From Schmidtea nova (Eukaryota), in assembly GCA_044892505.1 (NCBI GenBank), contig CM097882.1, positions 397,234,001 to 397,298,000 of the forward strand: 64,000 bases of DNA, written 5' to 3'. Positions within the stretch are counted from its first letter, which is position 1, and every line of letters starts with the position of its first letter. A program made the translations under genes and the position numbers. Under the pieces are notes generated by a model. The model did no database searches, had not been told where the DNA came from, and was given only the letters and a program-made list of their open reading frames with translations. Positions 1 to 49,900 of the stretch are shown here, piece after piece.

Positions 1-473
1 TGAAGTTAGACATGAAGTGAAAAATTATCTTCGATAATAGTCTAATGATAATTTAATTGTTAGTAATCAGAAAATGGCATCTCGATTGAAAAAATTGGTT
101 AAAATATATAACTACTAAAAATGGATATGATTGTTAATTTGGAAAAAAAATCGAAAATCAAATATATGTGGTCTTTCGTAATCAATTAGATTACAGGAAT
201 AAAATCCTGGATCTTTAATAAAATAAGAAGCATCATCAAGTTTAAGTATTCAAAAAGAAAATTTACTCTAGCAGGTAATATTTTTTCCCAGTGTTTTGAA
301 GATGTTGTATGAGATAATTATCGTTGAAAACAAGCTTACATTACTTTTTCACTTGACACAAATTTGTTACTAATGACAATTTTCCATAATTGATAAAAAC
401 ATTTTAGAAGAATGTTAATAGAGCCATACAAAAAAATCCAAATTTTTTTGGATTTAAAAAAATTAAATTTTAC

Positions 474-1342
474 CTGGTATTCCGGGAGTCGTAGTTCCAG
501 GTGTTGTAGATATAGTCGATGTACTTCCAGTAGTAGTTGTTACAGTAGGAGTTTGTGTTGTAGTAGATCTGGTCGTTGATTCAGTCGTTGATTCAGTCGT
601 TGATCCAGTCGTCGATTCAGTCGTTGATCCAGTCGTTGATTCAGTCGTTGATCCAGTCGTCGATTCAGTCGTTGATCCAATCGTTGATCCAGTCGTTGAT
701 CCAGTCGATGAACTTCCAGAGGTAGTTGTTTCTGACGTTGTACTTAAACCAGTAGTTGTTACAGTAGGAGTTTGAGTTGATGTAGTTCCAGTTGTTGTAG
801 TTCCAGTTGTTGTAGTTCCAGTTGTTGTAGTTCCAGTTGTGGTTGATTCAGTCGGAGTTGTAGTAATTACGGTTGTTGTTTCTTTTTCTCCGCAACCTTC
901 GATTGTTACTTTCAATGTCACTTTCTCTTTGGGTGATGACAAAGTAATTGTAATTTTTATAGCTACCACTTTCTCGACAACCCTCTCAATTTCCTCGTAT
1001 TCCTTTATGTATGTGACAGTGAGACCGGTTTCCAATGGTTTGTATTCCTTTTCGTTCTCATAAAGTACAAGCACACTGAAAAATATATTTTCCATAATTT
1101 TCGATCTTCAATATCTTGAATAAAATCTTACTTGAATGTTTGGATATTGACTATATTTTCAAATTTGATTTTCGTAACGATGACTGGTTTGTAGAATTTT
1201 ATTTCAAATTTCGGTTCTGTTTTAATTACAGTTGCATTCCAGGTGTCAGTTATGAGACTTGTTTCAGATGTTCCTTTTTCTGGTACAACAATTTCTTTCA
1301 CATACTCTTTTGTTGAAATCAAAACAGGCTTTTCCTTGCAAC
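474..1342 (-). CDS. Array 1 cassette (1342-1132, 1075-474)
   Basis: 211 + 602 = 813 nt = 271 codons. Junctions G|GT (Gly), AA|T (Asn), G|. Intron 1076-1131 is 56 nt. Confidence 0.9.
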
Positions 1343-4300
1343 CTGAAATGAGTTAAGGTTGTGAATTATATTTGCTCAATCGTGAATGTGTAAACAATTA
1401 CCTTAAGGTTAATTTTTGTATTTTATTTTATTTTTAATTCGGTATGATTTTATTTAATTACCATGAACTTTTATTTGATTTACGGAAAATTTAATTTTTG
1501 TTTAAAATTGTCAAAATTATTTAAGAAAAAATGAAAGAAATTTGAAAATAATATAAAAATATTGTTTAATTTTGGAGTTTTATTTAATGTGGAAAATCCA
1601 AATCTTTTAAATTCTCCTTATTCCGACATAAATTGTGGCAGAGCGAAACTTCATTGTAAATCTGAGTCATCGAATTGAGATTTATCAGAAAACATTTAAA
1701 ATGCAAGCTGATCAGATTATACAATCAATTATCGAACAATCCTTTCTATATTTAACTGTCTTTGTTGAAGTTAGACATGAAGTGAAAAATTATCTTCGAT
1801 AATAGTCTAATGATAATTTAATTGTTAGTAATCAGAAAATGGCATCTCGATTGAAAAAATTGGTTAAAATATATAACTACTAAAAATGGATATGATTGTT
1901 AATTTGGAAAAAAAATCGAAAATCAAATATATGTGGTCTTTCGTAATCAATTAGATTACAGGAATAAAATCCTGGATCTTTAATAAAATAAGAAGCATCA
2001 TCAAGTTTAAGTATTCAAAAAGAAAATTTACTCTAGCAGGTAATATTTTTTCCCAGTGTTTTGAAGATGTTGTATGAGATAATTATCGTTGAAAACAAGC
2101 TTACATTACTTTTTCACTTGACACAAATTTGTTACTAATGACAATTTTCCATAATTGATAAAAACATTTTAGAAGAATGTTAATAGAGCCATACAAAAAA
2201 ATCCAAATTTTTTTGGATTTAAAAAAATTAAATTTTACCTGGTATTCCGGGAGTCGTAGTTCCAGGTGTTGTAGATATAGTCGATGTACTTCCAGTAGTA
2301 GTTGTTACAGTAGGAGTTTGTGTTGTAGTAGATCTGGTCGTTGATTCAGTCGTTGATCCAGTTGTTGATCCAGTCGTCGATTCAGTCGTTGATCCAATCG
2401 TTGATCCAGTCGATGAACTTCCAGAGGTAATTGTTTCTGACGTTGTACTTAAACCAGTAGTTGTTACAGTAGGAGTTTGAGTTGATGTAGTTCCAGTTGT
2501 TGTAGTTCCAGTTGTTGTAGTTCCAGTTGTTGTAGTTCCAGTTGTGGTTGATTCAGTCGGAGTTGTAGTAATTACGGTTGTTGTTTCTTTTTCTCCGCAA
2601 CCTTCGATTGTTACTTTCAATGTCACTTTCTCTTTGGGTGATGACAAAGTAATTGTAATTTTTATAGCTACCACTTTTTCGACAACCCTCTCAATTTCCT
2701 CGTATTCCTTTATGTATGTGACAGTGAGACCGGTTTCAAATGGTTTGTATTCCTTTTCGTTCTCATAAAGTACAAGCACACTGAAAAATATATTTTCCAT
2801 AATTTTCGATCTTCAATATCTTGAATAAAATCTTACTTGAATGTTTGGATATTGACTATATTTTCAAATTTGATTTTCGTAACGATGACTGGTTTGTAGA
2901 ATTTTATTTCAAATTTCGGTTCTGTTTTAATTACAGTTGCATTCCAGGTGTCAGTTATGAGACTTGTTTCAGATGTTCCTTTTTCTGGTACAACAATTTC
3001 TTTCACATACTCTTTTGTTGAAATCAAAACAGGCTTTTCCTTGCAACCTGAAATGAGTTAAGGTTGTGAATTATATTTGCTCAATCGTGAATGTGTAAAC
3101 AATTACCTTAAGGTTAATTTTTGTATTTTATTTTATTTTTAATTCGGTATGATTTTATTTAATTACCATGAACTTTTATTTGATTTACGGAAAATTTAAT
3201 TTTTGTTTAAAATTGTCAAAATTATTTAAGAAAAAATGAAAGAAATTTGAAAATAATATAAAAATATTGTTTAATTTTGGAGTTTTATTTAATGTGGAAA
3301 ATCCAAATCTTTTAAATTCTCCTTATTCCGACATAAATTGTGGCAGAGCGAAACTTCATTGAAACTGAGTCATCGAATTGAGATTTATCAGAAAACATTT
3401 AAAATGCAAGCTGATCAGATTATACAATCAATTATCGAACAATCCTTTCTATATTTAACTGTCTTTGTTGAAGTTAGACATGAAGTGAAAAATTATCTTC
3501 GATAATAGTCTAATGATAATTTAATTGTTAGTAATCAGAAAATGGCATCTCGATTGAAAAAATTGGTTAAAATATATAACTACTAAAAATGGATATGATT
3601 GTTAATTTGGAAAAAAAATCGAAAATCAAATATATGTGGTCTTTCGTAATCAATTAGATTAGAGGAATAAAATCCTGGATCTTTTATAAAATAAGAAGCA
3701 TCATCAAGTTTAAGTATTCAAAAAGAAAATTTACTCTAGCAGGTAATATTTTTTCCCAGTGTTTTGAAGATGTTGTATGAGATAATTATCGTTGAAAACA
3801 AGCTTACATTACTTTTTCACTTGACACAAATTTGTTACTAATGACAATTTTCCATAATTGATAAAAACATTTTAGAAGAATGTTAATAGAGCCATACAAA
3901 AAAATCCAAATTTTTTTGGATTTAAAAAAATTAAATTTTACCTGGTATTCCGGGAGTCGTAGTTCCAGGTGTTGTAGATATAGTCGATGTACTTCCAGTA
4001 GTAGTTGTTACAGTAGGAGTTTGTGTTGTAGTAGATCTGGTCGTTGATTCAGTCGTTGATTCAGTCGTTGATCCAGTCGTCGATTCAGTCGTTGATCCAG
4101 TCGTTGATTCAGTCGTTGATCCAGTCGTCGATTCAGTCGTTGATCCAATCGTTGATCCAGTCGTTGATCCAGTCGATGAACTTCCAGAGGTAGTTGTTTC
4201 TGACGTTGTACTTAAACCAGTAGTTGTTACAGTAGGAGTTTGAGTTGATGTAGTTCCAGTTGTTGTAGTTCCAGTTGTTGTAGTTCCAGTTGTTGTAGTT

Positions 4301-7300
4301 CCAGTTGTGGTTGATTCAGTCGGAGTTGTAGTAATTACGGTTGTTGTTTCTTTTTCTCCGCAACCTTCGATTGTTACTTTCAATGTCACTTTCTCTTTGG
4401 GTGATGACAAAGTAATTGTAATTTTTATAGCTACCACTTTCTCGACAACCCTCTCAATTTCCTCGTATTCCTTTATGTATGTGACAGTGAGACCGGTTTC
4501 CAATGGTTTGTATTCCTTTTCGTTCTCATAAAGTACAAGCACACTGAAAAATATATTTTCCATAATTTTCGATCTTCAATATCTTGAATAAAATCTTACT
4601 TGAATGTTTGGATATTGACTATATTTTCAAATTTGATTTTCGTAACGATGACTGGTTTGTAGAATTTTATTTCAAATTTCGGTTCTGTTTTAATTACAGT
4701 TGCATTCCAGGTGTCAGTTATGAGACTTGTTTCAGATGTTCCTTTTTCTGGTACAACAATTTCTTTCACATACTCTTTTGTTGAAATCAAAACAGGCTTT
4801 TCCTTGCAACCTGAAATGAGTTAAGGTTGTGAATTATATTTGCTCAATCGTGAATGTGTAAACAATTACCTTAAGGTTAATTTTTGTATTTTATTTTATT
4901 TTTAATTCGGTATGATTTTATTTAATTACCATGAACTTTTATTTGATTTACGGAAAATTTAATTTTTGTTTAAAATTGTCAAAATTATTTAAGAAAAAAT
5001 GAAAGAAATTTGAAAATAATATAAAAATATTGTTTAATTTTGGAGTTTTATTTAATGTGGAAAATCCAAATCTTTTAAATTCTCCTTATTCCGACATAAA
5101 TTGTGGCAGAGCGAAACTTCATTGTAAATCTGAGTCATCGAATTGAGATTTATCAGAAAACATTTAAAATGCAAGCTGATCAGATTATACAATCAATTAT
5201 CGAACAATCCTTTCTATATTTAACTGTCTTTGTTGAAGTTAGACATGAAGTGAAAAATTATCTTCGATAATAGTCTAATGATAATTTAATTGTTAGTAAT
5301 CAGAAAATGGCATCTCGATTGAAAAAATTGGTTAAAATATATAACTACTAAAAATGGATATGATTGTTAATTTGGAAAAAAAATCGAAAATCAAATATAT
5401 GTGGTCTTTCGTAATCAATTAGATTACAGGAATAAAATCCTGGATCTTTAATAAAATAAGAAGCATCATCAAGTTTAAGTATTCAAAAAGAAAATTTACT
5501 CTAGCAGGTAATATTTTTTCCCAGTGTTTTGAAGATGTTGTATGAGATAATTATCGTTGAAAACAAGCTTACATTACTTTTTCACTTGACACAAATTTGT
5601 TACTAATGACAATTTTCCATAATTGATAAAAACATTTTAGAAGAATGTTAATAGAGCCATACAAAAAAATCCAAATTTTTTTGGATTTAAAAAAATTAAA
5701 TTTTACCTGGTATTCCGGGAGTCGTAGTTCCAGGTGTTGTAGATATAGTCGATGTACTTCCAGTAGTAGTTGTTACAGTAGGAGTTTGTGTTGTAGTAGA
5801 TCTGGTCGTTGATTCAGTCGTTGATTCAGTCGTTGATCCAGTCGTCGATTCAGTCGTTGATCCAGTCGTTGATTCAGTCGTTGATCCAGTCGTCGATTCA
5901 GTCGTTGATCCAATCGTTGATCCAGTCGTTGATCCAGTCGATGAACTTCCAGAGGTAGTTGTTTCTGACGTTGTACTTAAACCAGTAGTTGTTACAGTAG
6001 GAGTTTGAGTTGATGTAGTTCCAGTTGTTGTAGTTCCAGTTGTTGTAGTTCCAGTTGTTGTAGTTCCAGTTGTGGTTGATTCAGTCGGAGTTGTAGTAAT
6101 TACGGTTGTTGTTTCTTTTTCTCCGCAACCTTCGATTGTTACTTTCAATGTCACTTTCTCTTTGGGTGATGACAAAGTAATTGTAATTTTTATAGCTACC
6201 ACTTTCTCGACAACCCTCTCAATTTCCTCGTATTCCTTTATGTATGTGACAGTGAGACCGGTTTCCAATGGTTTGTATTCCTTTTCGTTCTCATAAAGTA
6301 CAAGCACACTGAAAAATATATTTTCCATAATTTTCGATCTTCAATATCTTGAATAAAATCTTACTTGAATGTTTGGATATTGACTATATTTTCAAATTTG
6401 ATTTTCGTAACGATGACTGGTTTGTAGAATTTTATTTCAAATTTCGGTTCTGTTTTAATTACAGTTGCATTCCAGGTGTCAGTTATGAGACTTGTTTCAG
6501 ATGTTCCTTTTTCTGGTACAACAATTTCTTTCACATACTCTTTTGTTGAAATCAAAACAGGCTTTTCCTTGCAACCTGAAATGAGTTAAGGTTGTGAATT
6601 ATATTTGCTCAATCGTGAATGTGTAAACAATTACCTTAAGGTTAATTTTTGTATTTTATTTTATTTTTAATTCGGTATGATTTTATTTAATTACCATGAA
6701 CTTTTATTTGATTTACGGAAAATTTAATTTTTGTTTAAAATTGTCAAAATTATTTAAGAAAAAATGAAAGAAATTTGAAAATAATATAAAAATATTGTTT
6801 AATTTTGGAGTTTTATTTAATGTGGAAAATCCAAATCTTTTAAATTCTCCTTATTCCGACATAAATTGTGGCAGAGCGAAACTTCATTGTAAATCTGAGT
6901 CATCGAATTGAGATTTATCAGAAAACATTTAAAATGCAAGCTGATCAGATTATACAATCAATTATCGAACAATCCTTTCTATATTTAACTGTCTTTGTTG
7001 AAGTTAGACATGAAGTGAAAAATTATCTTCGATAATAGTCTAATGATAATTTAATTGTTAGTAATCAGAAAATGGCATCTCGATTGAAAAAATTGGTTAA
7101 AATATATAACTACTAAAAATGGATATGATTGTTAATTTGGAAAAAAAATCGAAAATCAAATATATGTGGTCTTTCGTAATCAATTAGATTACAGGAATAA
7201 AATCCTGGATCTTTAATAAAATAAGAAGCATCATCAAGTTTAAGTATTCAAAAAGAAAATTTACTCTAGCAGGTAATATTTTTTCCCAGTGTTTTGAAGA

Positions 7301-10300
7301 TGTTGTATGAGATAATTATCGTTGAAAACAAGCTTACATTACTTTTTCACTTGACACAAATTTGTTACTAATGACAATTTTCCATAATTGATAAAAACAT
7401 TTTAGAAGAATGTTAATAGAGCCATACAAAAAAATCCAAATTTTTTTGGATTTAAAAAAATTAAATTTTACCTGGTATTCCGGGAGTCGTAGTTCCAGGT
7501 GTTGTAGATATAGTCGATGTACTTCCAGTAGTAGTTGTTACAGTAGGAGTTTGTGTTGTAGTAGATCTGGTCGTTGATTCAGTCGTTGATTCAGTCGTTG
7601 ATCCAGTCGTCGATTCAGTCGTTGATCCAGTCGTTGATTCAGTCGTTGATCCAGTCGTCGATTCAGTCGTTGATCCAATCGTTGATCCAGTCGTTGATCC
7701 AGTCGATGAACTTCCAGAGGTAGTTGTTTCTGACGTTGTACTTAAACCAGTAGTTGTTACAGTAGGAGTTTGAGTTGATGTAGTTCCAGTTGTTGTAGTT
7801 CCAGTTGTTGTAGTTCCAGTTGTTGTAGTTCCAGTTGTGGTTGATTCAGTCGGAGTTGTAGTAATTACGGTTGTTGTTTCTTTTTCTCCGCAACCTTCGA
7901 TTGTTACTTTCAATGTCACTTTCTCTTTGGGTGATGACAAAGTAATTGTAATTTTTATAGCTACCACTTTCTCGACAACCCTCTCAATTTCCTCGTATTC
8001 CTTTATGTATGTGACAGTGAGACCGGTTTCCAATGGTTTGTATTCCTTTTCGTTCTCATAAAGTACAAGCACACTGAAAAATATATTTTCCATAATTTTC
8101 GATCTTCAATATCTTGAATAAAATCTTACTTGAATGTTTGGATATTGACTATATTTTCAAATTTGATTTTCGTAACGATGACTGGTTTGTAGAATTTTAT
8201 TTCAAATTTCGGTTCTGTTTTAATTACAGTTGCATTCCAGGTGTCAGTTATGAGACTTGTTTCAGATGTTCCTTTTTCTGGTACAACAATTTCTTTCACA
8301 TACTCTTTTGTTGAAATCAAAACAGGCTTTTCCTTGCAACCTGAAATGAGTTAAGGTTGTGAATTATATTTGCTCAATCGTGAATGTGTAAACAATTACC
8401 TTAAGGTTAATTTTTGTATTTTATTTTATTTTTAATTCGGTATGGTTTTATTTAATTACCATGAACTTTTATTTGATTTACGGAAAATTTAATTTTTGTT
8501 TAAAATTGTCAAAATTATTTAAGAAAAAATGAAAGAAATTTGAAAATAATATAAAAATATTGTTTAATTTTGGAGTTTTATTTAATGTGGAAAATCCAAA
8601 TCTTTTAAATTCTCCTTATTCCGACATAAATTGTGGCAGAGCGAAACTTCATTGAAACTGAGTCATCGAATTGAGATTTATCAGAAAACATTTAAAATGC
8701 AAGCTGATCAGATTATACAATCAATTATCGAACAATCCTTTCTATATTTAACTGTCTTTGTTGAAGTTAGACATGAAGTGAAAAATTATCTTCGATAATA
8801 GTCTAATGATAATTTAATTGTTAGTAATCAGAAAATGGCATCTCGATTGAAAAAATTGGTTAAAATATATAACTACTAAAAATGGATATGATTGTTAATT
8901 TGGAAAAAAAATCGAAAATCAAATATATGTGGTCTTTCGTAATCAATTAGATTACAGGAATAAAATCCTGGATCTTTTATAAAATAAGAAGCATCATCAA
9001 GTTTAAGTATTCAAAAAGAAAATTTACTCTAGCAGGTAATATTTTTTCCCAGTGTTTTGAAGATGTTGTATGAGATAATTATCGTTGAAAACAAGCTTAC
9101 ATTACTTTTTCACTTGACACAAATTTGTTACTAATGACAATTTTCCATAATTGATAAAAACATTTTAGAAGAATGTTAATAGAGCCATACAAAAAAATCC
9201 AAATTTTTTTGGATTTAAAAAAATTAAATTTTACCTGGTATTCCGGGAGTCGTAGTTCCAGGTGTTGTAGATATAGTCGATGTACTTCCAGTAGTAGTTG
9301 TTACAGTAGGAGTTTGTGTTGTAGTAGATCTGGTCGTTGATTCAGTCGTTGATTCAGTCGTTGATCCAGTCGTTGATTCAGTCGTTGATCCAGTCGTCGA
9401 TTCAGTCGTTGATCCAATCGTTGATCCAGTCGATGAACTTCCAGAGGTAGTTGTTTCTGACGTTGTACTTAAACCAGTAGTTGTTACAGTAGGAGTTTGA
9501 GTTGATGTAGTTCCAGTTGTAGTAGTTCCAGTTGTTGTAGTTCCAGTTGTTGTATTTCCAGTTGTGGTTGATTCAGTCGGAGTTGTAGTAATTACGGTTG
9601 TAGTTTCTTTTTCTCCGCAACCTTCGATTGTTACTTTCAATGTCACTTTCTCTTTGGGTGATGACAAAGTAATTGTAATTTTTATAGCTACCACTTTCTC
9701 GACAACCCTCTCAATTTCCTCGTATTCCTTTATGTATGTGACAGTGAGACCGGTTTCCAATGGTTTGTATTCCTTTTCGTTCTCATAAAGTACAAGCACA
9801 CTGAAAAATATATTTTCCATAATTTTCGATCTTCAATATCTTGAATAAAATCTTACTTGAATGTTTGGATATTGACTATATTTTCAAATTTGATTTTCGT
9901 AACGATGACTGGTTTGTAGAATTTTATTTCAAATTTCGGTTCTGTTTTAATTACAGTTGCATTCCAGGTGTCAGTTATGAGACTTGTTTCAGATGTTCCT
10001 TTTTCTGGTACAACAATTTCTTTCACATACTCTTTTGTTGAAATCAAAACAGGCTTTTCCTTGCAACCTGAAATGAGTTAAGGTTGTGAATTATATTTGC
10101 TCAATCGTGAATGTGTAAACAATTACCTTAAGGTTAATTTTTGTATTTTATTTTATTTTTAATTCGGTATGATTTTATTTAATTACCATGAACTTTTATT
10201 TGATTTACGGAAAATTTAATTTTTGTTTAAAATTGTCAAAATTATTTAAGAAAAAATGAAAGAAATTTGAAAATAATATAAAAATATTGTTTAATTTTGG

Positions 10301-28300: not shown

Positions 28301-28833
28301 TTAACTGTCTAAAAGAAACTTTTGCATGCTTATAAGCAATACTATACCAAATATTATGTCAGATTGGAATTAACGATCTGTTTCATGATATCGAAAATCT
28401 ATTCAATTGGTTAAAAATGCATGAGACTAAATACAGCTCTGTTTATAATGTTGACATGCCTGAGTTAGGAGGAATGTCGATCGAATAAGAATGAAAGAAC
28501 TATTTATTCTTAGCAAAGCTCTAATATTTTTAGAAATATTGTCTCGGAATTAGCTAAAATACGTGATTGTAATTACTCAATTTGGCTGCAATCACGAAAC
28601 AAAACGAAGGAACAATTGAATGGCTAAAGATTATAAATATTTTTTTAAAAGGAAGTTATTTAAATTATTTAGCTATTTTTATTTGTTTAAATTTTACTTT
28701 TTGATATTTTTTATTGAAATTTAATTTATGGAATTGACGTCATTTAAAGAATATTTTGGTTAAACATGAATAATCAAATAAAGTTTTCTTACATAATTGT
28801 GTATTTTGAAATTTTGAAGAAATAAAATAAGTG

Positions 28834-28924
<91 letters not shown>

Positions 28925-37900: not shown

Positions 37901-40900
37901 ATTACCATGAACACTTTCATTTGACCTACAGAAAATATAATTTTTGTTCAAAATTGTCAATATTATTTAAGACAAAATGAAAGGAATTTGGAAATCCTAT
38001 AAAAATAATTTTTAATTTTTGAGTTTTTTATATGTGGAAAATCCAAATGTTATAAATTCTCTTAATTCCGACATGAATTGTGCTCGATAAAAGATTAATT
38101 GTAAAACCGTGAGTCACCGAATTGAGATTTATCAGAAAACATTTGAAATGTAAGCTGATCAGATTATAAAATCAATTATCGAACCATCCTTTCTATATTT
38201 AACTGTCTTTGTTTAAAGTTCATCATGAAGCGTCAAATTATCTTCAAAAGTAGTCTAATGATAGTTTAGTTGATAATAATCAGAAAATGGCATCTCGATT
38301 GAAGAAATTGGTTAAAATATATCTACTGAAAATGGATATGATTGATAATTTGAAAAAGAAATTCGAAAATAAATTATATGTGGTTATTGGTATTTAACTA
38401 GATTACAGGAATAAAATACTGGATCTTTCTAAAAATAAGAAGCATCACCCAGTTTAAGTATTCAAAATGAAAATATACTCTAGAATGTAATATTTTGTCC
38501 CAGTGTTTTGAAATTTTGTATGAAATAATTTTCGTTGAAAACAAGCTTACATTATTTTTCACTTGACAAAAAGTTTTTACTAATGACAAATAATTATAAT
38601 TGATACAAACATTTTAAAAGAAAGTTAATAGAGCAATACAAAAAAATCTAAATTTGTTGTTTTTGGAAAAAATTAAATTTTACCTGGTATTCTGGGGGTC
38701 GTAGTTCCAGATGTTGTAGATATAGTTGATGTACTTCCAGTGGTAGTTGTTACAGTAGGAGTTTGTGTTGTAGTAGATCCTGTCGTTGATCCAGTCGATG
38801 TACTTCCAGAGGTAGTTGTTTCTGACGTTGTACTTGAACCAGTAGTTGTTACAGTAGGAGTTTCAGTTGATGTGGTAGATCCTGTAGTTGTTGCAGTAGG
38901 TGTTAAAGTTGAAGTTCCTGTGGTAGTGGATCCAGTTGTTGTAGTTCCAGTTGTTGTAGTTCCAGTTGTTGTAGTTCCAGTTGTTGTTGTTCCAGTTGTC
39001 GTTGATTCAGTCGGAAGTGTAGTAATTACAGTTGTTGTTTCTTTTTCTCCGCAACCTTCGATTGTTACTTTCAATGTCACTTTCTCTTTGGGCGATGACA
39101 AAGTAATTGTAATTTTTATAGCTACTACTTTCTCGACAACCCTCTCAATTTCCTCGTATTCCTTTATGTATGTGACAGTGAGACCGGTTTCTAATGGTTT
39201 GTATTCTTTTTCGTTCTCATAAAGTACAAGCACACTGAAAATTATATTTTCCATAATTTTCGATATTCAATATCTTGAGAAAAATCTTACTTGAATGTTT
39301 GGATATTGACTATATTTTCAAATTTGATCTTCGTAACGATGACTGGTTTGTAGAATTTTATTTCAAATTTCGGTTCTGTTTTAATTACAGTTGCATTCCA
39401 GGTGTCAGTTATGAGACTTGTTTCAGATGTTCCTTTTTCTGGTACAACAATTTCTTTCACATACTCTTTTGTTGAAATCAAAACAGGCTTTTCTTTGCAA
39501 CCTGAAATGAGTGAAGGTTGTGAATTATATTTGCTCAATCGTGAATGTGTAAACAATTACCTTAAGGTTAATTTTTTAATTTAATTTAATTTAATTTAAC
39601 TTATAATTTTTGTATGATTATATTTAATTACCATGAACACTTTCATTTGACCTACAGAAAATATAATTTTTGTTCAAAATTGTCAATATTATTTAAGACA
39701 AAATGAAAGGAATTTGGAAATCCTATAAAAATAATTTTTAATTTTTGAGTTTTTTATATGTGGAAAATCCAAATGTTATAAATTCTCTTAATTCCGACAT
39801 GAATTGTGCTCGATAAAAGATTAATTGTAAAACCGTGAGTCACCGAATTGAGATTTATCAGAAAACATTTGAAATGTAAGCTGATCAGATTATAAAATCA
39901 ATTATCGAACCATCCTTTCTATATTTAACTGTCTTTGTTTAAAGTTCATCATGAAGCGTCAAATTATCTTCAAAAGTAGTCTAATGATAGTTTAGTTGAT
40001 AATAATCAGAAAATGGCATCTCGATTGAAGAAATTGGTTAAAATATATCTACTGAAAATGGATATGATTGATAATTTGAAAAAGAAATTCGAAAATAAAT
40101 TATATGTGGTTATTGGTATTTAACTAGATTACAGGAATAAAATACTGGATCTTTCTAAAAATAAGAAGCATCACCCAGTTTAAGTATTCAAAATGAAAAT
40201 ATACTCTAGAAGGTAATATTTTGTCCCAGTGTTTTGAAATTTTGTATGAAATAATTTTCGTTGAAAACAAGCTTACATTATTTTTCACTTGACAAAAAGT
40301 TTTTACTAATGACAAATAATTATAATTGATACAAACATTTTAAAAGAAAGTTAATAGAGCAATACAAAAAAATCTAAATTTGTTGTTTTTGGAAAAAATT
40401 AAATTTTACCTGGTATTCTGGGGGTCGTAGTTCCAGATGTTGTAGATATAGTTGATGTACTTCCAGTGGTAGTTGTTACAGTAGGAGTTTGTGTTGTAGT
40501 AGATCCTGTCGTTGATCCAGTCGATGTACTTCCAGAGGTAGTTGTTTCTGACGTTGTACTTGAACCAGTAGTTGTTACAGTAGGAGTTTCAGTTGATGTG
40601 GTAGATCCTGTAGTTGTTGCAGTAGGTGTTAAAGTTGAAGTTCCTGTGGTAGTGGATCCAGTTGTTGTAGTTCCAGTTGTTGTAGTTCCAGTTGTTGTAG
40701 TTCCAGTTGTTGTTGTTCCAGTTGTCGTTGATTCAGTCGGAAGTGTAGTAATTACAGTTGTTGTTTCTTTTTCTCCGCAACCTTCGATTGTTACTTTCAA
40801 TGTCACTTTCTCTTTGGGCGATGACAAAGTAATTGTAATTTTTATAGCTACTACTTTCTCGACAACCCTCTCAATTTCCTCGTATTCCTTTATGTATGTG

Positions 40901-43900
40901 ACAGTGAGACCGGTTTCTAATGGTTTGTATTCTTTTTCGTTCTCATAAAGTACAAGCACACTGAAAATTATATTTTCCATAATTTTCGATATTCAATATC
41001 TTGAGAAAAATCTTACTTGAATGTTTGGATATTGACTATATTTTCAAATTTGATCTTCGTAACGATGACTGGTTTGTAGAATTTTATTTCAAATTTCGGT
41101 TCTGTTTTAATTACAGTTGCATTCCAGGTGTCAGTTATGAGACTTGTTTCAGATGTTCCTTTTTCTGGTACAACAATTTCTTTCACATACTCTTTTGTTG
41201 AAATCAAAACAGGCTTTTCTTTGCAACCTGAAATGAGTGAAGGTTGTGAATTATATTTGCTCAATCGTGAATGTGTAAACAATTACCTTAAGGTTAATTT
41301 TTTAATTTAATTTAATTTAATTTAACTTATAATTTTTGTATGATTATATTTAATTACCATGAACACTTTCATTTGACCTACAGAAAATATAATTTTTGTT
41401 CAAAATTGTCAATATTATTTAAGACAAAATGAAAGGAATTTGGAAATCCTATAAAAATAATTTTTAATTTTTGAGTTTTTTATATGTGGAAAATCCAAAT
41501 GTTATAAATTCTCTTAATTCCGACATGAATTGTGCTCGATAAAAGATTAATTGTAAAACCGTGAGTCACCGAATTGAGATTTATCAGAAAACATTTGAAA
41601 TGTAAGCTGATCAGATTATAAAATCAATTATCGAACCATCCTTTCTATATTTAACTGTCTTTGTTTAAAGTTCATCATGAAGCGTCAAATTATCTTCAAA
41701 AGTAGTCTAATGATAGTTTAGTTGATAATAATCAGAAAATGGCATCTCGATTGAAGAAATTGGTTAAAATATATCTACTGAAAATGGATATGATTGATAA
41801 TTTGAAAAAGAAATTCGAAAATAAATTATATGTGGTTATTGGTATTTAACTAGATTACAGGAATAAAATACTGGATCTTTCTAAAAATAAGAAGCATCAC
41901 CCAGTTTAAGTATTCAAAATGAAAATATACTCTAGAAGGTAATATTTTGTCCCAGTGTTTTGAAATTTTGTATGAAATAATTTTCGTTGAAAACAAGCTT
42001 ACATTATTTTTCACTTGACAAAAAGTTTTTACTAATGACAAATAATTATAATTGATACAAACATTTTAAAAGAAAGTTAATAGAGCAATACAAAAAAATC
42101 TAAATTTGTTGTTTTTGGAAAAAATTAAATTTTACCTGGTATTCCGGGGGTCGTAGTTCCAGATGTTGTAGATATAGTTGATGTACTTCCAGTGGTAGTT
42201 GTTACAGTAGGAGTTTGTGTTGTAGTAGATCCTGTCGTTGATCCAGTCGATGTACTTCCAGAGGTAGTTGTTTCTGACGTTGTACTTGAACCAGTAGTTG
42301 TTACAGTAGGAGTTTCAGTTGATGTGGTAGATCCTGTAGTTGTTGCAGTAGGTGTTAAAGTTGAAGTTCCTGTGGTAGTGGATCCAGTTGTTGTAGTTCC
42401 AGTTGTTGTAGTTCCAGTTGTTGTAGTTCCAGTTGTTGTTGTTCCAGTTGTCGTTGATTCAGTCGGAAGTGTAGTAATTACAGTTGTTGTTTCTTTTTCT
42501 CCGCAACCTTCGATTGTTACTTTCAATGTCACTTTCTCTTTGGGCGATGACAAAGTAATTGTAATTTTTATAGCTACTACTTTCTCGACAACCCTCTCAA
42601 TTTCCTCGTATTCCTTTATGTATGTGACAGTGAGACCGGTTTCTAATGGTTTGTATTCTTTTTCGTTCTCATAAAGTACAAGCACACTGAAAATTATATT
42701 TTCCATAATTTTCGATATTCAATATCTTGAGAAAAATCTTACTTGAATGTTTGGATATTGACTATATTTTCAAATTTGATCTTCGTAACGATGACTGGTT
42801 TGTAGAATTTTATTTCAAATTTCGGTTCTGTTTTAATTACAGTTGCATTCCAGGTGTCAGTTATGAGACTTGTTTCAGATGTTCCTTTTTCTGGTACAAC
42901 AATTTCTTTCACATACTCTTTTGTTGAAATCAAAACAGGCTTTTCTTTGCAACCTGAAATGAGTGAAGGTTGTGAATTATATTTGCTCAATCGTGAATGT
43001 GTAAACAATTACCTTAAGGTTAATTTTTTAATTTAATTTAATTTAATTTAACTTATAATTTTTGTATGATTATATTTAATTACCATGAACACTTTCATTT
43101 GACCTACAGAAAATATAATTTTTGTTCAAAATTGTCAATATTATTTAAGACAAAATGAAAGGAATTTGGAAATCCTATAAAAATAATTTTTAATTTTTGA
43201 GTTTTTTATATGTGGAAAATCCAAATGTTATAAATTCTCTTAATTCCGACATGAATTGTGCTCGATAAAAGATTAATTGTAAAACCGTGAGTCACCGAAT
43301 TGAGATTTATCAGAAAACATTTGAAATGTAAGCTGATCAGATTATAAAATCAATTATCGAACCATCCTTTCTATATTTAACTGTCTTTGTTTAAAGTTCA
43401 TCATGAAGCGTCAAATTATCTTCAAAAGTAGTCTAATGATAGTTTAGTTGATAATAATCAGAAAATGGCATCTCGATTGAAGAAATTGGTTAAAATATAT
43501 CTACTGAAAATGGATATGATTGATAATTTGAAAAAGAAATTCGAAAATAAATTATATGTGGTTATTGGTATTTAACTAGATTACAGGAATAAAATACTGG
43601 ATCTTTCTAAAAATAAGAAGCATCACCCAGTTTAAGTATTCAAAATGAAAATATACTCTAGAAGGTAATATTTTGTCCCAGTGTTTTGAAATTTTGTATG
43701 AAATAATTTTCGTTGAAAACAAGCTTACATTATTTTTCACTTGACAAAAAGTTTTTACTAATGACAAATAATTATAATTGATACAAACATTTTAAAAGAA
43801 AGTTAATAGAGCAATACAAAAAAATCTAAATTTGTTGTTTTTGGAAAAAATTAAATTTTACCTGGTATTCCGGGGGTCGTAGTTCCAGATGTTGTAGATA

Positions 43901-46900
43901 TAGTTGATGTACTTCCAGTGGTAGTTGTTACAGTAGGAGTTTGTGTTGTAGTAGATCCTGTCGTTGATCCAGTCGATGTACTTCCAGAGGTAGTTGTTTC
44001 TGACGTTGTACTTGAACCAGTAGTTGTTACAGTAGGAGTTTCAGTTGATGTGGTAGATCCTGTAGTTGTTGCAGTAGGTGTTAAAGTTGAAGTTCCTGTG
44101 GTAGTGGATCCAGTTGTTGTAGTTCCAGTTGTTGTAGTTCCAGTTGTTGTAGTTCCAGTTGTTGTTGTTCCAGTTGTCGTTGATTCAGTCGGAAGTGTAG
44201 TAATTACAGTTGTTGTTTCTTTTTCTCCGCAACCTTCGATTGTTACTTTCAATGTCACTTTCTCTTTGGGCGATGACAAAGTAATTGTAATTTTTATAGC
44301 TACTACTTTCTCGACAACCCTCTCAATTTCCTCGTATTCCTTTATGTATGTGACAGTGAGACCGGTTTCTAATGGTTTGTATTCTTTTTCGTTCTCATAA
44401 AGTACAAGCACACTGAAAATTATATTTTCCATAATTTTCGATATTCAATATCTTGAGAAAAATCTTACTTGAATGTTTGGATATTGACTATATTTTCAAA
44501 TTTGATCTTCGTAACGATGACTGGTTTGTAGAATTTTATTTCAAATTTCGGTTCTGTTTTAATTACAGTTGCATTCCAGGTGTCAGTTATGAGACTTGTT
44601 TCAGATGTTCCTTTTTCTGGTACAACAATTTCTTTCACATACTCTTTTGTTGAAATCAAAACAGGCTTTTCTTTGCAACCTGAAATGAGTGAAGGTTGTG
44701 AATTATATTTGCTCAATCGTGAATGTGTAAACAATTACCTTAAGGTTAATTTTTTAATTTAATTTAATTTAATTTAACTTATAATTTTTGTATGATTATA
44801 TTTAATTACCATGAACACTTTCATTTGACCTACAGAAAATATAATTTTTGTTCAAAATTGTCAATATTATTTAAGACAAAATGAAAGGAATTTGGAAATC
44901 CTATAAAAATAATTTTTAATTTTTGAGTTTTTTATATGTGGAAAATCCAAATGTTATAAATTCTCTTAATTCCGACATGAATTGTGCTCGATAAAAGATT
45001 AATTGTAAAACCGTGAGTCACCGAATTGAGATTTATCAGAAAACATTTGAAATGTAAGCTGATCAGATTATAAAATCAATTATCGAACCATCCTTTCTAT
45101 ATTTAACTGTCTTTGTTTAAAGTTCATCATGAAACGTCAAATTATCTTCAAAAGTAGTCTAATGATAGTTTAGTTGATAATAATCAGAAAATGGCATCTC
45201 GATTGAAGAAATTGGTTAAAATATATCTACTGAAAATGGATATGATTGATAATTTGAAAAAGAAATTCGAAAATAAATTATATGTGGTTATTGGTATTTA
45301 ACTAGATTACAGGAATAAAATACTGGATCTTTCTAAAAATAAGAAGCATCATCCAGTTTAAGTATTCAAAATGAAAATATACTCTAGAAGGTAATATTTT
45401 GTCCCAGTGTTTTGAAATTTTGTATGAAATAATTTTCGTTGAAAACAAGCTTACATTATTTTTCACTTGACAAAAAGTTTTTACTAATGACAAATAATTA
45501 TAATTGATACAAACATTTTAAAAGAAAGTTAATAGAGCAATACAAAAAAATCTAAATTTGTTGTTTTTGGAAAAAATTAAATTTTACCTGGTATTCTGGG
45601 GGTCGTAGTTCCAGATGTTGTAGATATAGTTGATGTACTTCCAGTGGTAGTTGTTACAGTAGGAGTTTGTGTTGTAGTAGATCCTGTCGTTGATCCAGTC
45701 GATGTACTTCCAGAGGTAGTTGTTTCTGACGTTGTACTTGAACCAGTAGTTGTTACAGTAGGAGTTTCAGTTGATGTGGTAGATCCTGTAGTTGTTGCAG
45801 TAGGTGTTAAAGTTGAAGTTCCTGTGGTAGTGGATCCAGTTGTTGTAGTTCCAGTTGTTGTAGTTCCAGTTGTTGTAGTTCCAGTTGTTGTTGTTCCAGT
45901 TGTCGTTGATTCAGTCGGAAGTGTAGTAATTACAGTTGTTGTTTCTTTTTCTCCGCAACCTTCGATTGTTACTTTCAATGTCACTTTCTCTTTGGGCGAT
46001 GACAAAGTAATTGTAATTTTTATAGCTACTACTTTCTCGACAACCCTCTCAATTTCCTCGTATTCCTTTATGTATGTGACAGTGAGACCGGTTTCTAATG
46101 GTTTGTATTCTTTTTCGTTCTCATAAAGTACAAGCACACTGAAAATTATATTTTCCATAATTTTCGATAATCAATATCTTGAGAAAAATTTTACTTGAAT
46201 GTTTGGATATTGACTATATTTTCAAATTTGATCTTCGTAACGATGACTGGTTTGTAGAATTTTATTTCAAATTTCGGTTCTGTTTTAATTACAGTTGCAT
46301 TCCAGGTGTCAGTTATGAGACTTGTTTCAGATGTTCCTTTTTCTGGTACAACAATTTCTTTCACATACTCTTTTGTTGAAATCAAAACAGGCTTTTCTTT
46401 GCAACCTGAAATGAGTGAAGGTTGTGAATTATATTTGCTCAATCGTGAATGTGTAAACAATTACCTTAAGGTTAATTTTTTAATTTAATTTAATTTAACT
46501 TATAATTTTTGTATGATTATATTTAATTACCATGAACACTTTCATTTGACCTACAGAAAATATAATTTTTGTTCAAAATTGTCAATATTATTTAAGACAA
46601 AATGAAAGGAATTTGGAAATCCTATAAAAATAATTTTTAATTTTTGAGTTTTTTTATATGTGGAAAATCCAAATGTTATAAATTCTGTTAACTCCGACAT
46701 GAATTGTGCTCGATAGAAGATTAATTGTAAAACCGTGAGTCACCGAATTGAGATTTATCAGAAAACATTTGAAATGTAAGCTGATCAGATTATAAAATCA
46801 ATTATCGAACCATCCTTTCTATATTTAACTGTCTTTGTTTAAAGTTCATCATGAAGCGTCAAATTATCTTCAAAAGTAGTCTAATGATAGTTTAGTTGAT

Positions 46901-49900
46901 AATAATCAGAAAATGGCATCTCGATTGAAGAAATTGGTTAAAATATATCTACTGAAAATGGATATGATTGATAATTTGAAAAAGAAATTCGAAAATAAGT
47001 TATATGTGGTTATTGGTATTTAACTAGATTACGGGAATAAAATACTGGATCTTTCTAAAAATAAGAAGCATCATCCAGTTTAAGTATTCAAAATGAAAAT
47101 TTTCTCTAGTAGGTGTTATTTTATTCAGTTTTTTGAAGATATCACTGAAAGATTTCCTTCATCATGTATCAAGTATGGATTGGTGCATTATTCTTTAGGA
47201 AACTGAGCCTCTTAATCTCTAGAAGAAAATGAGTAAGCTCATTTTCCAGAATGGCACCGTATCCTCCTTACGTCATGTGATTGCTGTACTTCACTAGAGG
47301 ATAAGTTCCACGAGCTGAGAAAAGACTCCAAAACATAATGGAATGTTATCTATATTTCACAGTTTGCTGAATGCAGTCAGAGTGAAATCATTCTTCTACA
47401 CGACGCCAGCAGCATATCTGTCCTTCAAATTTTAAAAGAGTGATACGTGATTCGTCACTCCAAATGACTAAACGCTTTTATTTTGCTGTCCAACTCTTTC
47501 TCTCCTGACACCACTTCGAGTGACGACGACGAATTGTTTCTGTAATCAAAGGCTTCCTTGCTAAGTATCTACCATAGAAACAATAAAAATGTAATTCTCA
47601 ATGAATTATGGACATGATGTTATACACAGGGACAGTTTTATATATGCTCAAACGTGAATTTGTAAACAATTACCTTAAGATTAATTTTTTACCGACGATG
47701 AGGCACCACAAGTCATTTCAGCTGCCGTTGTGTACGGATGCTCAGATGTTTAGGGTGGCCTGACGTACTTGTTGACATGTGTCTTCTCCTGGCGGTACTT
47801 TCTCAGGAAATACTTACTAGTTCCTTTGTGATTGCTAGTCAACGCAGCAGTTTCACTCTGACTTTTTCCACAAACGTAACAGCCGTAAATAATGCCTTTC
47901 TGAAAAACTGTAATCTCTCTCTGAGTAACCATTTTTAAGAAAATGACAATCCTCCATTATCATGACTCACTGTTGTGAGTCTGATGTGAATAGTCATATC
48001 ATAAGAAAGTAACAATCCTTCATTAACATGACTCACTGTTATCGCTTTTGTGTGTCTGGTGTGAGTAGTCATATTCTGTGTGTGTCTGTGTGTGAGTTCC
48101 TGTGTGCGTACATGTACGCATGCAGCATGTTGAAGGTGTTGGTGACCATTGTTCCCTTTGCTGTTCACATTGCACTGCAGACGTTCATTATAAACTTCAA
48201 TATGTAAATAATATCCTGACTGGAGACTTTTGGTAGGCTAGGGTACCTATGGTAATTAACTAATTTGCATAAATAAAATACTCGATTTTATAAAATGTAA
48301 AAATGCTTTTATTTAATTAGAACGTTTATAAAACAATAAGGAAACATTTAAAATTTGTTGATATTTAAAATAAATAAATTTTACCTGTTATTATGCTGGT
48401 CGTACTTCCCGGTGTTGTAGATGTTAGTGACAGTGAACTAGATCCTGTTTGTGTTGCTGTCGGCGTTTGAGTAGAAATTGTGGTTGATCTCATTGTCGAT
48501 TCTGCCGTTGATTGCTTTTCTACGCATCCCATTATTATCAATTTTAATTTTAGTTCTTCGGATTTGTTAATTTTTGTCATCATTATTGATAGTTTGGACA
48601 CCTTGATATTAATATTGTCAATTTTGATTTGTTCACTTTCGTTTTTATTTTCTTCGTTCGCTTTCAGTATTTTTGATTGTCCAGAATTTCCCTCTGCTAT
48701 AATTATCCTATTTTCATAAATGAAATTTGATAAAATTAATGGAATTTCATATAGTAATCATACGTGTATCTCCCGATGTTTGAATGATGATCAAATATTA
48801 TATCTGTTATAACTATTGGTTGGTAAAAATTTATAATTATATTTGGTGTTATGTCTTTAACATTTGCTGTCCAAAATTCTGTCAAAATCTTTTCTTTATT
48901 TTCAAAATTGCTGCTTGGGATTATTTCGCTTATGAATTCTTTCGTTGAAACTAAGGTTAAATTTTCTTTGCAAACTGAATTATTAGATATTGGTTAAATG
49001 ATAATTATCCATTATATATGTAACTTGATGGTGGCGTTGACGTTGTCGGAGGGGGAGTTTTCGATGTGGTTGGTGTCGTTGAGACTGTCAAAAATAAAAA
49101 TAATATATAATAATTAAATAATATTTTATTTAAGAGATTTGCTATTTTAGTTTTTAGTTATAATTGACTGTTAGTTCATTGGTCTAGTTTTATTATTAGA
49201 AAATCCTTAGTACAGTTTTAGAAATTTTTAATTATTTTTAATTAATAATTTTTACATCCTATAAACTGTTTTATTTTGTTGAGGATACCTAAATTAGAAA
49301 TAATATAATAAATAAACAAAATTACTTGGGGGAAAATCGTCATGGGGAATGACCCGATTGATAGGAGCTTGGGAAAGAAAAGGGGAATAAAAAGGAATGA
49401 GAAATGAGGAAGGAAAACAAAAGAAAAGAAATCAGACAAGGAAAATGAAATAGAGGTCAGCAATAATTAATTAGTGCAAACAGGAAGAAATTCTAAAGTT
49501 GGGAAAAACAAAAAACAACAACAAGAATTTTATCTTGACAACCGGTCAGAGATAACGTGGGCAAAAAAATCAAACAAGTCGGAGCGGCAAAAGAGAAACA
49601 GAGGTTATCTTGACGGCTGTCAGAGATAACTCCGTTGCTGGAAAAATGAATGGGAAATTGTTGGAAAAAATGGAATTACAAGTGGTAATATTAAGTGCCA
49701 CAAAGTGAAGAGATATAAAAGGAGAAACACAGCAGAAGCGATCAGAATTTTAGAAAGAAGTTTCAGAGAAATTTAGAGAGAAGTTTTGACAGAATTAAAG
49801 AAAGAAGTTTAGAGAGCAGAATATAATCAGAAGTTTGGGAGAAGATTTAAGAAAATACCGAGAAAATTATTGGAGAGATTGAAAGATTGTGTGAAGCCAG

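What the first reader, a model, noticed from the sequence alone, without database searches (positions are those of the whole stretch)
1..47140. Two independently homogenised exon-plus-intron arrays inside one gene encode an identical domain
Seen: within each array, even the roughly 0.9 kb introns are near-identical. Between arrays, introns and linkers are clearly diverged. The roughly 400 nt encoding the domain show 6 fixed differences between arrays, all synonymous (e.g. gattttcg/gatcttcg, gggtgat/gggcgat, ttccaat/ttctaat), so the consensus protein domain is identical. Inference: concerted evolution acts per array (unequal crossover including introns), with purifying selection and possibly cross-array conversion confined to the domain exons. 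The approximately 17 kb non-repetitive, TE-rich spacer may isolate the two arrays.
Basis: partly seen in the sequence, partly recalled or inferred. Interest (0 to 1): 0.7.

Follow-up and report, generated by a model that had tools for sequence, protein, structure and literature searches.

The report
Flatworm mucin gene with two arrays
A giant slime-protein (mucin-like) gene, probably of a planarian flatworm, holds two separately amplified runs of a two-exon "lectin-like bead plus sugar-carrying linker" cassette. The bead stays identical between the runs because protein-changing mutations are removed, so this is a tidy but ordinary example of a known kind of gene growth.

Summary
On the minus strand, 9 units (window 1-15989) and 8 units (32685-47140) each comprise exon A (211 nt), a 56-nt intron, exon B and a ~0.9-kb intron. 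Long introns differ by 0.15-0.35% within an array and 12% between arrays. The 402 nt encoding the 134-aa domain carry exactly 6 fixed differences, all synonymous.

Corrections:
- Array 1 runs 14.5 kb past the window start, so it has 18 units (26 in all). Six of them carry L85F within a two-unit higher-order repeat.
- The spacer also holds an intact diverged cassette and a truncated exon A.
- The domain is a divergent F5/8 type C (discoidin) fold.
- The gene looks like a gel-forming mucin: VWD-C8-TIL upstream, a cystine-knot-like end downstream.

Interpretation:
- Per-array amplification or homogenisation by unequal exchange, plus strong purifying selection, is supported (0 nonsynonymous differences against ~37 expected).
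- Exon-confined cross-array conversion is not supported. I counted 6 synonymous differences against 10.5 expected (P=0.10), pS equals the embedded short intron's divergence (7%), and no unit is mosaic.
- One weak low-divergence tract covers 75 nt of intron plus exon A (p=0.04).

No reads could be laid, so the assembly, the join across the N gap and expression remain untested. This is a new member of a known kind.

The parts
1..15989 (-). Array 1, window part: 9 of 18 cassette units. The array continues to about window -14,550 in the genome.
4600..4810 (-). Exon A of a typical unit (211 nt, enters in phase 1); N-terminal half of the discoidin-like domain, with its first Cys and the invariant Trp
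4544..4599 (-). 56-nt intron inside the domain (GT..AG in all 26 units)
3942..4543 (-). Exon B: C-terminal half of the domain (ends ..EGCGEKE), then a 92-188 aa linker of about 70% Ser+Thr with 12-nt repeats; leaves in phase 1
3048..3941 (-). Long (~0.9 kb) intron of a typical unit; its last 74-75 nt before exon A are almost identical between arrays
15990..32591 (-). 16.6-kb spacer between the arrays: dispersed repeats, microsatellites and further exons of the same series
17371..17673 (.). N gap 17457-17586 flanked by 85-nt inverted-repeat arms placed symmetrically about it; non-coding
25036..25363 (-). Candidate Cys-rich exon ending in a Thr run. Its donor is phase 1, but the acceptor phase does not fit a direct join to the preceding cassette. 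Unverified.
31365..31992 (-). Intact diverged cassette: exon A' 31782-31992 (211 nt, 57% aa identity), 52-nt intron, exon B' 31365-31729 (365 nt); phases 1-1, open frame
32592..32684 (-). Truncated exon A (88% nt identity) behind an intact unit-type acceptor, followed by unrelated sequence with an in-frame stop; probably a pseudo-exon that must be skipped
32685..47140 (-). Array 2: 8 cassette units, period exactly 1726 nt (last unit 1639 nt), plus 735 nt of unit-type intron upstream of the first exon A
48509..48972 (-). Older diverged copy of the domain (exon A-like 48775-48972, exon B-like 48509-48706)
51490..51936 (-). Oldest upstream copy of the domain; matches database protein P0004 residues 418-553 at 60%
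54672..55070 (-). C8 (54864-55070) and TIL (54672-54851) exons
57119..62993 (-). Three VWD-domain exon groups (57119-57535, 59122-59469, 62744-62993), i.e. the N-terminal mucin/VWF-type assemblies; N gaps at 55830-56034 and 62329-62743

Best explanation
The window holds the central part of one very large minus-strand gene for a secreted, gel-forming-mucin-like protein of a flatworm (probably a planarian).

Architecture. The N-terminus carries VWD-C8-TIL assemblies. The C-terminus, 16-18 kb below the window start, looks like a cystine knot. The middle is a string of cassettes. Each cassette is a 134-aa divergent F5/8 type C (discoidin) domain closed by a Cys pair, followed by a heavily Ser/Thr-rich linker that is presumably O-glycosylated.

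Why cassettes can be copied. Each cassette is two exons with symmetric phase-1 borders, so any number of copies stays in frame.

History. At least six old cassettes lie in series. Two of them were each amplified in tandem together with their introns, to 8 and 18 copies, by unequal crossing-over or replication slippage. Each array is now nearly uniform, while the two arrays differ by 12% at intron sites.

Why the domain is identical. Protein-changing substitutions have been removed by purifying selection, while synonymous sites and the small internal intron drifted at roughly the neutral rate. No exon-specific exchange between arrays is needed.

Shown here: anatomy, copy structure, substitution pattern, fold class, domain context. 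Inferred: the single transcript, glycosylation, a glycan-binding or cross-linking role for the beads, and the exchange mechanism.
For: Gene model. Splice sites and phases were read directly. All 25 units with the canonical donor are open and a multiple of 3 long, 6,601 aa in total. GT..AG is kept in all 26 short introns.

Homogeneity. Long-intron divergence is 0.15%/0.35% within arrays against 12.1% between. Array 2 forms one clade on a long branch in both the intron tree and the domain-coding tree.

Unequal-exchange signatures. Array 1 shows a two-unit higher-order repeat: alternating 1717/1765-nt units share L85F, a synonymous change and linker deletions. Edge units retain states of the other array.

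Selection. Nonsynonymous differences are 0 against 37.4 expected (P=6e-17). Synonymous differences are 6 against 10.5 expected (P=0.10). The short intron is 7.1% diverged and pS is 7.0%.

Domain identity.
- Protein-language-model neighbours are F5_F8_type_C clusters.
- The exon-A profile finds true FA58C-plus-PTS repeat proteins among 1.84 billion representatives (P0005 E=2e-9, P0010).
- hhalign of the family against those FA58C copies gives 94.7% probability, E=6e-8, over 113 columns.
- An AF2 model of the paralogous copy in P0004 has only discoidin, FVIII-C2 and CBM32 domains among its best Foldseek hits (E about 2e-6, TM 0.55-0.62).

Gene context.
- Pfam finds VWD, C8 and TIL on window ORFs.
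- Database proteins P0004 (VWD-C8-TIL plus the first bead) and P0001 (last array unit, terminal bead, C..GGC..CC.P motif) map collinearly to the two ends of the locus at 60-93% identity.
- A weak Cys_knot match has E=0.033, and a downstream ORF carries GCECNSC.

Not allelic copies. The flanks of the two arrays are unrelated.

Not featureless copies. The longest exact repeats are 5.2 kb and 3.0 kb.

Literature. F5_F8 domains are described as characteristic of lophotrochozoan gel-forming-mucin-like proteins (PMC4948705).
Against: - No RNA evidence. The single-transcript model and skipping of the truncated exon at 32592-32684 are therefore inferred.
- An N gap lies between the arrays.
- The Cys-rich candidate exon does not fit in phase, so the exon chain across the spacer is incomplete.
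- Synonymous divergence is nominally lower than long-intron divergence (7% against 12%).
- None of the 6 synonymous changes is a transversion, against 4.9 expected.
- A tract of intron plus exon A is less diverged than the rest (p=0.04). Some cross-array exchange is therefore not excluded.
- The array domain itself was not folded or scanned as a joined protein. Pfam finds nothing on the single exons.
Confidence: 0.72

Rival explanations
1. Occasional ectopic gene conversion between the two arrays, 17 kb or more apart, keeps the domain-coding part (at least exon A) identical, on top of purifying selection.
For: The least diverged stretch of putatively neutral sites is the last 75 nt of the long intron plus exon A's synonymous sites plus 9 nt of the short intron: 3 differences against 14.6 expected, permutation p=0.04. 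Only 1 of the 74 intron nt before exon A differs. Silent sites of the domain region overall are 7.0% diverged against 12.0% in the long intron, Fisher p=0.09.
Against: The tract is not confined to exons and leaves out exon B, which has 4 synonymous differences against 5.2 expected, and most of the short intron (4/56). All six diagnostic exon sites are fixed in all 26 units. No unit is mosaic; foreign states are isolated single sites, mainly in edge units. The significance is marginal and the tract was found post hoc. A conserved branch-point, pyrimidine-tract or splicing-enhancer block would give the same picture.
Confidence: 0.15
2. Assembly artefact. The arrays are collapsed, over-polished or wrongly joined at the N gap, or are divergent haplotypes placed in tandem, so the near-identity within arrays or the 'one gene' layout is not real.
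For: Some units are 100% identical and array 2's period is exactly 1726 nt. An N gap sits between the arrays. No reads could be laid.
Against: Copies carry structured, copy-specific variants (higher-order repeat, singletons, linker-length classes). The longest exact repeats are 5.2 kb and 3.0 kb, within the reach of long reads. The arrays' flanks are unrelated and hold different parts of the gene in the expected order, which rules out simple haplotype duplication. The gap's edges are arms of one small inverted repeat. Four runs of one study hold 46-83% of the sampled words of 28324-34323, but they may be the source data.
Confidence: 0.08
3. The locus is not one functional gene. Array 2 ends at the truncated exon A, which brings an in-frame stop, so either two transcripts exist or part of the locus is a decaying pseudogene.
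For: The truncated exon at 32592-32684 keeps a perfect unit-type acceptor and runs into a stop. The Cys-rich ORF does not fit in phase. There is no RNA support.
Against: All 25 measured units, the diverged cassette after the truncated exon and the terminal bead are open and phase-compatible. There are 0 nonsynonymous differences against 37 expected. All linker length changes preserve the frame. N-terminal VWD assemblies are found only upstream of array 2 and the cystine-knot-like end only downstream of array 1.
Confidence: 0.1

Closest known systems
[quoted passage not shown]
   Same: An intragenic tandem array whose 5.6-kb unit holds two exons plus introns and encodes one protein domain. Copies are nearly identical, and the repeat subtypes (A, B, C) differ only by two or three synonymous exon substitutions (PMC4378929).
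   Different: Here two separate arrays of the same cassette lie in one gene and are 12% apart in their introns. The units are 1.7 kb. The domain is discoidin-like with a mucin linker. Copy-number polymorphism is not known.
Gel-forming mucins and protostome mucin-like proteins with F5_F8_type_C domains (hemolectin/hemocytin type)
   Same: N-terminal VWD-C8-TIL assemblies, PTS regions and a cystine-knot-type end. F5_F8 domains are reported as characteristic of lophotrochozoan members (PMC4948705). Small Cys-bounded domains interrupt the PTS region, as CysD does in MUC2 and MUC5.
   Different: The interspersed domain is a compact, sequence-divergent discoidin that Pfam misses on single exons. It is repeated about 30 times. 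The PTS region is encoded by many small exons with introns rather than one giant exon. No fourth VWD or VWC domain was seen between array 1 and the knot.
FA58C-plus-PTS repeat proteins found in the representative library (P0005, P0010)
   Same: Alternation of an F5/8 type C domain (Cys ... GC) with Thr-rich linkers. The exon-A profile matches their conserved Trp/strand motif.
   Different: Their domains are canonical (Pfam E 1e-46 to 1e-59) and about 20 residues longer. Their organisms and gene structures are unknown.
A second giant mucin-like gene 3.7 Mb away in the same genome (earlier notes s1-381109 and s1-381132)
   Same: It is described as two homogenised exon-intron arrays encoding a two-Cys, discoidin-like bead between glycosylated linkers.
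   Different: That domain has 151 aa and no Trp, and is not detected by the exon-A profile of this gene. I did not examine that locus.

Membership tests
F5/8 type C (discoidin, Pfam PF00754 / CBM32-like fold) | Significant match to the Pfam family model | tested here: not met
Exon A and exon B peptides scanned separately give no F5_F8_type_C hit.
F5/8 type C (discoidin, Pfam PF00754 / CBM32-like fold) | Profile-level homology to bona fide FA58C domains | tested here: met
   The exon-A profile hits P0005 and P0010, whose Pfam F5_F8_type_C E-values are 4e-59 and 2e-46. hhalign of A2 against A3 gives 94.7% probability, E=6e-8, over 113 columns.
F5/8 type C (discoidin, Pfam PF00754 / CBM32-like fold) | Beta-sandwich discoidin fold | tested here: inconclusive
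   The model is of the paralogous copy P0004:408-556 with the family alignment (pLDDT 63.6, pTM 0.61). The best Foldseek PDB hits are all discoidin, FVIII C2 or CBM32 (E 2e-6, TM 0.55-0.62). The confidence is moderate, and it is not the array domain itself.
F5/8 type C (discoidin, Pfam PF00754 / CBM32-like fold) | Cys near each end of the domain (closing disulfide) and a conserved Trp in the first third | tested here: met
   The domain starts GC.. and ends ..EGC. Trp is invariant across the five diverged copies. The disulfide itself is inferred.
Gel-forming mucin / VWF-type secreted polymer | N-terminal repeated VWD-C8-TIL assemblies | tested here: met
   VWD E=4e-26, 3e-10 and 5e-3 (the last is below Pfam's cutoff and is cut by an N gap). 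C8 E=1e-17 and TIL E=1e-7. Further VWD, C8 and TIL pieces come from mapping P0004.
Gel-forming mucin / VWF-type secreted polymer | Long Pro/Thr/Ser-rich region | tested here: met
   26 linkers of 92-188 aa with about 70% Ser+Thr. Glycosylation was not tested.
Gel-forming mucin / VWF-type secreted polymer | C-terminal cystine knot (CTCK) | tested here: inconclusive
   Pfam Cys_knot E=0.033, below the cutoff and covering the first half only. A following ORF with GCECNSC gives no Pfam hit alone. The motif-level match is shared with P0001.
Gel-forming mucin / VWF-type secreted polymer | All parts in one transcript, with a signal peptide | not testable with these tools
The 5' end of the gene was not mapped.
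Concerted evolution of a tandem array | Copies within an array far more alike than copies between arrays, non-coding parts included | tested here: met
   Long intron 0.15-0.35% within against 12.1% between.
Concerted evolution of a tandem array | Paralogous copies within a species more alike than positional orthologues between species (repeated homogenisation rather than one recent burst) | not testable with these tools
   The only related sequences are two UniParc proteins with no DNA on record. The last unit's domain is 100% identical to its neighbours but about 79% to P0001, while its linker is alignable to P0001's. This fits either history.

The most novel reading that the evidence does not exclude
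The block made of the last 75 intron nucleotides plus exon A is kept nearly identical between two arrays that are otherwise 12% apart. Two causes are possible. One is recurrent ectopic conversion across the 17-kb spacer. The other is that the intron block, which contains a CCTTAAG|GTAAT 5'-splice-site-like palindrome 60 nt before the acceptor, is a dedicated splicing element that enforces orderly cassette-by-cassette splicing in a 26-fold repeated exon array.
Probability: 0.2. Interest if true: 0.5.

Novelty: new member of a known kind. Interest (0 to 1): 0.35.

Why it matters
The locus gives a clean natural experiment. Two independently homogenised copies of one exon-intron cassette sit in the same gene, with an internal 56-nt intron serving as a built-in neutral control. 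Together they separate the effects of unequal exchange, selection and conversion. It documents how flatworm mucus or glue proteins reach giant size by copying symmetric-phase cassettes, introns included. It also adds a compact, sequence-divergent discoidin 'bead' to the domains that interrupt mucin glycan rods, which suggests lectin-type self-cross-linking of planarian slime. None of this overturns current views; LPA KIV-2 and other mucin arrays show the same principles.

Tried and rejected
- Pfam on single exons found nothing useful.
- A PDB sequence-profile search with exon A gave chance-level hits only.
- A word-index protein search with the exon-B ORF gave no hits.
- The look-up of encoding contigs for P0001 and P0004 found nothing on record, so no sister-species DNA was available.
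My local scripts did keep the whole window as a BLAST subject or alignment source. No depth, variant or splice evidence could therefore be obtained.
- Haplotype mis-join is rejected: the arrays' flanks are unrelated and hold different gene parts.
- A 'TE-only spacer' is rejected: the spacer contains an intact cassette.
- The Cys-rich ORF at 25036-25428 cannot be taken as a certain exon; its acceptor phase does not fit.
- Pfam on the putative last knot exon gave no hit.
Exons were searched one at a time by reference, and the fold comes from a database protein's paralogous copy.
Full report
WHAT IS THERE

The window is AT-rich (about 30% G+C). It is G000:C1:397,234,001-397,298,000 of a 1.25-Gb assembly in 283 contigs, with matches on three contigs named C1-C3 (C1 is 612 Mb). 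Earlier notes of this scan call the genome planarian. The closest database proteins are two UniParc-only entries. I did not establish the organism's name.

Self-comparison shows two direct tandem arrays. The coding strand is minus.

A typical unit, read directly:
- Exon A, 4810..4600: 211 nt, entered in phase 1.
- A 56-nt intron.
- Exon B, 4543..3942: 602 nt, left in phase 1.
- A long intron of about 894 nt.

Exon A plus the first 191 nt of exon B encode a 134-aa domain that begins GC.. and ends ..EGC. The rest of exon B is a 92-188 aa linker with about 70% Ser+Thr, built partly from the 12-nt repeat seen.

CHECK OF THE OBSERVATION

In the window there are 9 units of array 1 and 8 of array 2. 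Array 2's period is exactly 1726 nt, apart from its last, 1639-nt unit. Units differ by 0-13 substitutions within an array and by about 190 between arrays.

Divergence by partition:

| Partition | Within array 1 | Within array 2 | Between arrays |
|---|---|---|---|
| Long intron | 0.15% | 0.35% | 12.1% |
| Short intron | 0% | 0.9% | 7.6% |
| Linker | 1.4% | 0.4% | about 20%, plus large indels |
| Domain coding | 0.26% | 0% | 1.6% |

Exactly six sites of the 402 domain-coding nt are fixed between arrays. All six are A<->G changes at third codon positions, and all are synonymous.

Three amendments:
- The window cuts array 1. The genome has nine more units, 18 in all, ending at window coordinate about -14,550.
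- Six array-1 units carry one amino-acid change, L85F.
- The spacer is not empty of gene parts (see "The rest of the gene").

THE N GAP

The gap at 17457-17586 lies in non-coding spacer, 1.8 kb upstream (in gene sense) of array 1's first exon A. No frame crosses it.

Its two edges, 17371-17456 and 17587-17673, are reverse complements of each other (94%) and lie symmetrically about the N run. That is what a small palindromic element with an unread centre would give. It is not what a join of unrelated contigs would give.

Continuity could not be tested with reads. I sent none of those letters as a query to any search tool afterwards, although my local scripts kept the whole window as a subject.

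IS IT AN ARTEFACT?

The flanks of the two arrays are unrelated and carry different parts of the gene. The arrays are therefore not two haplotypes placed in tandem.

Copies are not featureless:
- Array 1's distal half is a two-unit higher-order repeat. Alternating 1717- and 1765-nt units share L85F, a synonymous change and linker deletions.
- There are singletons and several linker-length classes.
- The longest exact repeats are 5.2 kb (array 1) and 3.0 kb (array 2), which long reads can resolve.

This argues against collapse or over-polishing but does not prove the copy numbers.

THE REST OF THE GENE

Upstream on the minus strand lie three VWD exon groups, a C8 exon and a TIL exon (Pfam). Then come two old, diverged copies of the bead at 51936..51490 and 48972..48509.

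After array 2 there is a truncated exon A (32684..32592). It sits behind a perfect unit-type acceptor and runs into a stop. Next comes an intact diverged cassette: 31992..31782, a 52-nt intron, then 31729..31365, with phases 1-1. A Cys-rich ORF at 25428..25036 has a donor of the right phase, but its acceptor phase does not fit.

After array 1 come a last diverged bead and a cystine-knot-like end. The Pfam Cys_knot match is below the cutoff (E=0.033), a C..GGC..CC.P motif is present, and a following ORF carries GCECNSC.

Two database proteins map collinearly to the two ends at 60-93% identity. They are P0004 (VWD-C8-TIL plus the first bead) and P0001 (last array unit, terminal bead, knot). They look like gene models from a related species.

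All 25 units with the canonical donor are open and a multiple of three long, giving 6,601 aa. The architecture is that of one gel-forming-mucin-like gene. No RNA evidence exists here.

WHAT THE BEAD IS

Pfam sees nothing in the single exons, and the word search was blank. The following lines of evidence point the same way:
- Protein-language-model neighbours of exon A are F5_F8_type_C clusters (a lead only).
- A profile of five diverged exon-A copies (A1) searched against 1.84 billion representatives found 11 proteins. They include true F5/8 type C plus Thr-rich-linker repeat proteins.
- Profile-profile comparison of the family with those FA58C copies gives 94.7% probability, E=6e-8.
- An AF2 model of the paralogous copy in P0004, using the family alignment (pLDDT 63.6), has only discoidin, factor VIII C2 and CBM32 domains among its best Foldseek PDB hits.

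I conclude that the bead is a compact, divergent discoidin domain. That step was left out.

In this genome the subtype is confined to this locus, apart from one weak hit on C2.

F5_F8 domains are reported as characteristic of lophotrochozoan gel-forming-mucin-like proteins (PMC4948705).

TESTING THE INTERPRETATION

Expected counts were derived from the long intron's transition and transversion rates (38 and 69 in 891 sites). The domain should then show 10.5 synonymous and 37.4 nonsynonymous differences. I counted 6 and 0, giving P(<=6)=0.10 and P(0)=6e-17.

Further comparisons:
- pS (6/86 = 7.0%) equals the divergence of the 56-nt intron that lies between the two domain exons (4/56 = 7.1%).
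- Neither differs significantly from the long intron: p=0.22 for pS alone, and p=0.09 for silent sites and short intron pooled.
- No unit is a mosaic of the two array types. 'Foreign' states are isolated single sites, mostly in edge units.

One residue of doubt remains. The last 75 nt of the long intron plus exon A form the least diverged tract of silent sites, with 3 differences against 14.6 expected, permutation p=0.04. None of the six synonymous changes is a transversion, against 4.9 expected. The tract is not confined to exons and excludes exon B. A splicing-signal constraint would look the same.

CONCERTED EVOLUTION OR RECENT BURSTS?

The higher-order repeat, the frame-preserving linker slippage and the more 'ancestral' edge units are the classical marks of unequal exchange. 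They fit both repeated homogenisation and a single recent amplification of one cassette per array.

The last unit of array 1 has a domain identical to its neighbours but a private linker that aligns with P0001's. This is again compatible with both histories. Only sister-species DNA can decide, and none was on record.

COMPARISON AND VERDICT

The closest analogue is the LPA KIV-2 repeat. It has two exons plus introns per unit, near-identical copies, and subtypes that differ only by synonymous changes (PMC4378929). The protein belongs with protostome gel-forming-mucin-like proteins that carry F5_F8 domains.

I did not test that locus.

The finding is real and well described. Part of its interpretation holds: per-array homogenisation and purifying selection. 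The exon-confined cross-array conversion is not supported. It is a new member of a known kind, of moderate interest.

Noticed in passing
window 2567-2780, and units outside the window (about -885 to -13058): Six array-1 units carry L85F (TTG>TTT). Array 2 has TTA at the same codon, so one site shows three states. The related-species protein P0001 also has Phe there, so Phe could be ancestral or convergent.
   Followed up: partly
window 4811-4885 and the same place in every unit: The conserved 75-nt end of the long intron contains CCTTAAG|GTAAT, a palindrome that looks like a 5' splice site about 60 nt before the real acceptor. Its function is unknown.
   Followed up: partly
window 55830-56034 and 62329-62743: Two further N runs lie inside the VWD/C8 region of the same gene. 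The second cuts a VWD exon (ORF 62744-62993 runs into it).
   Followed up: no
window 25403-25953, 20908-21275, 17663-18469: Dispersed repeats of about 330-800 nt with many copies at 76-91% identity on C1, C2 and C3 (7,969 first-look candidates for the whole 13.4-kb spacer query, only 39 scored). They are probably short non-autonomous elements.
   Followed up: partly
window 29261-29761 (-): A 166-aa ORF in the spacer with no Pfam family. It may be a transposon remnant or chance.
   Followed up: partly
L003:2802-3011 (+) and window about -22761..-23159 (-): There are two ORFs near the gene's 3' end. One is in the intron that splits the cystine-knot-like end; the other is downstream of the gene. 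By eye they look like transposase fragments (a helix-turn-helix piece and a pogo/DDE-like piece). I did not scan them.
   Followed up: no
G000:C2:447758427-447758597 (+): This is the only match to the exon-A profile outside this locus (E=1.6e-6, 98-aa open frame). It may be a distant paralogue.
   Followed up: no
window 28821-28936 and 25395-25430: Long (TA)n microsatellites in the spacer. They also produce spurious inverted-repeat calls.
   Followed up: no
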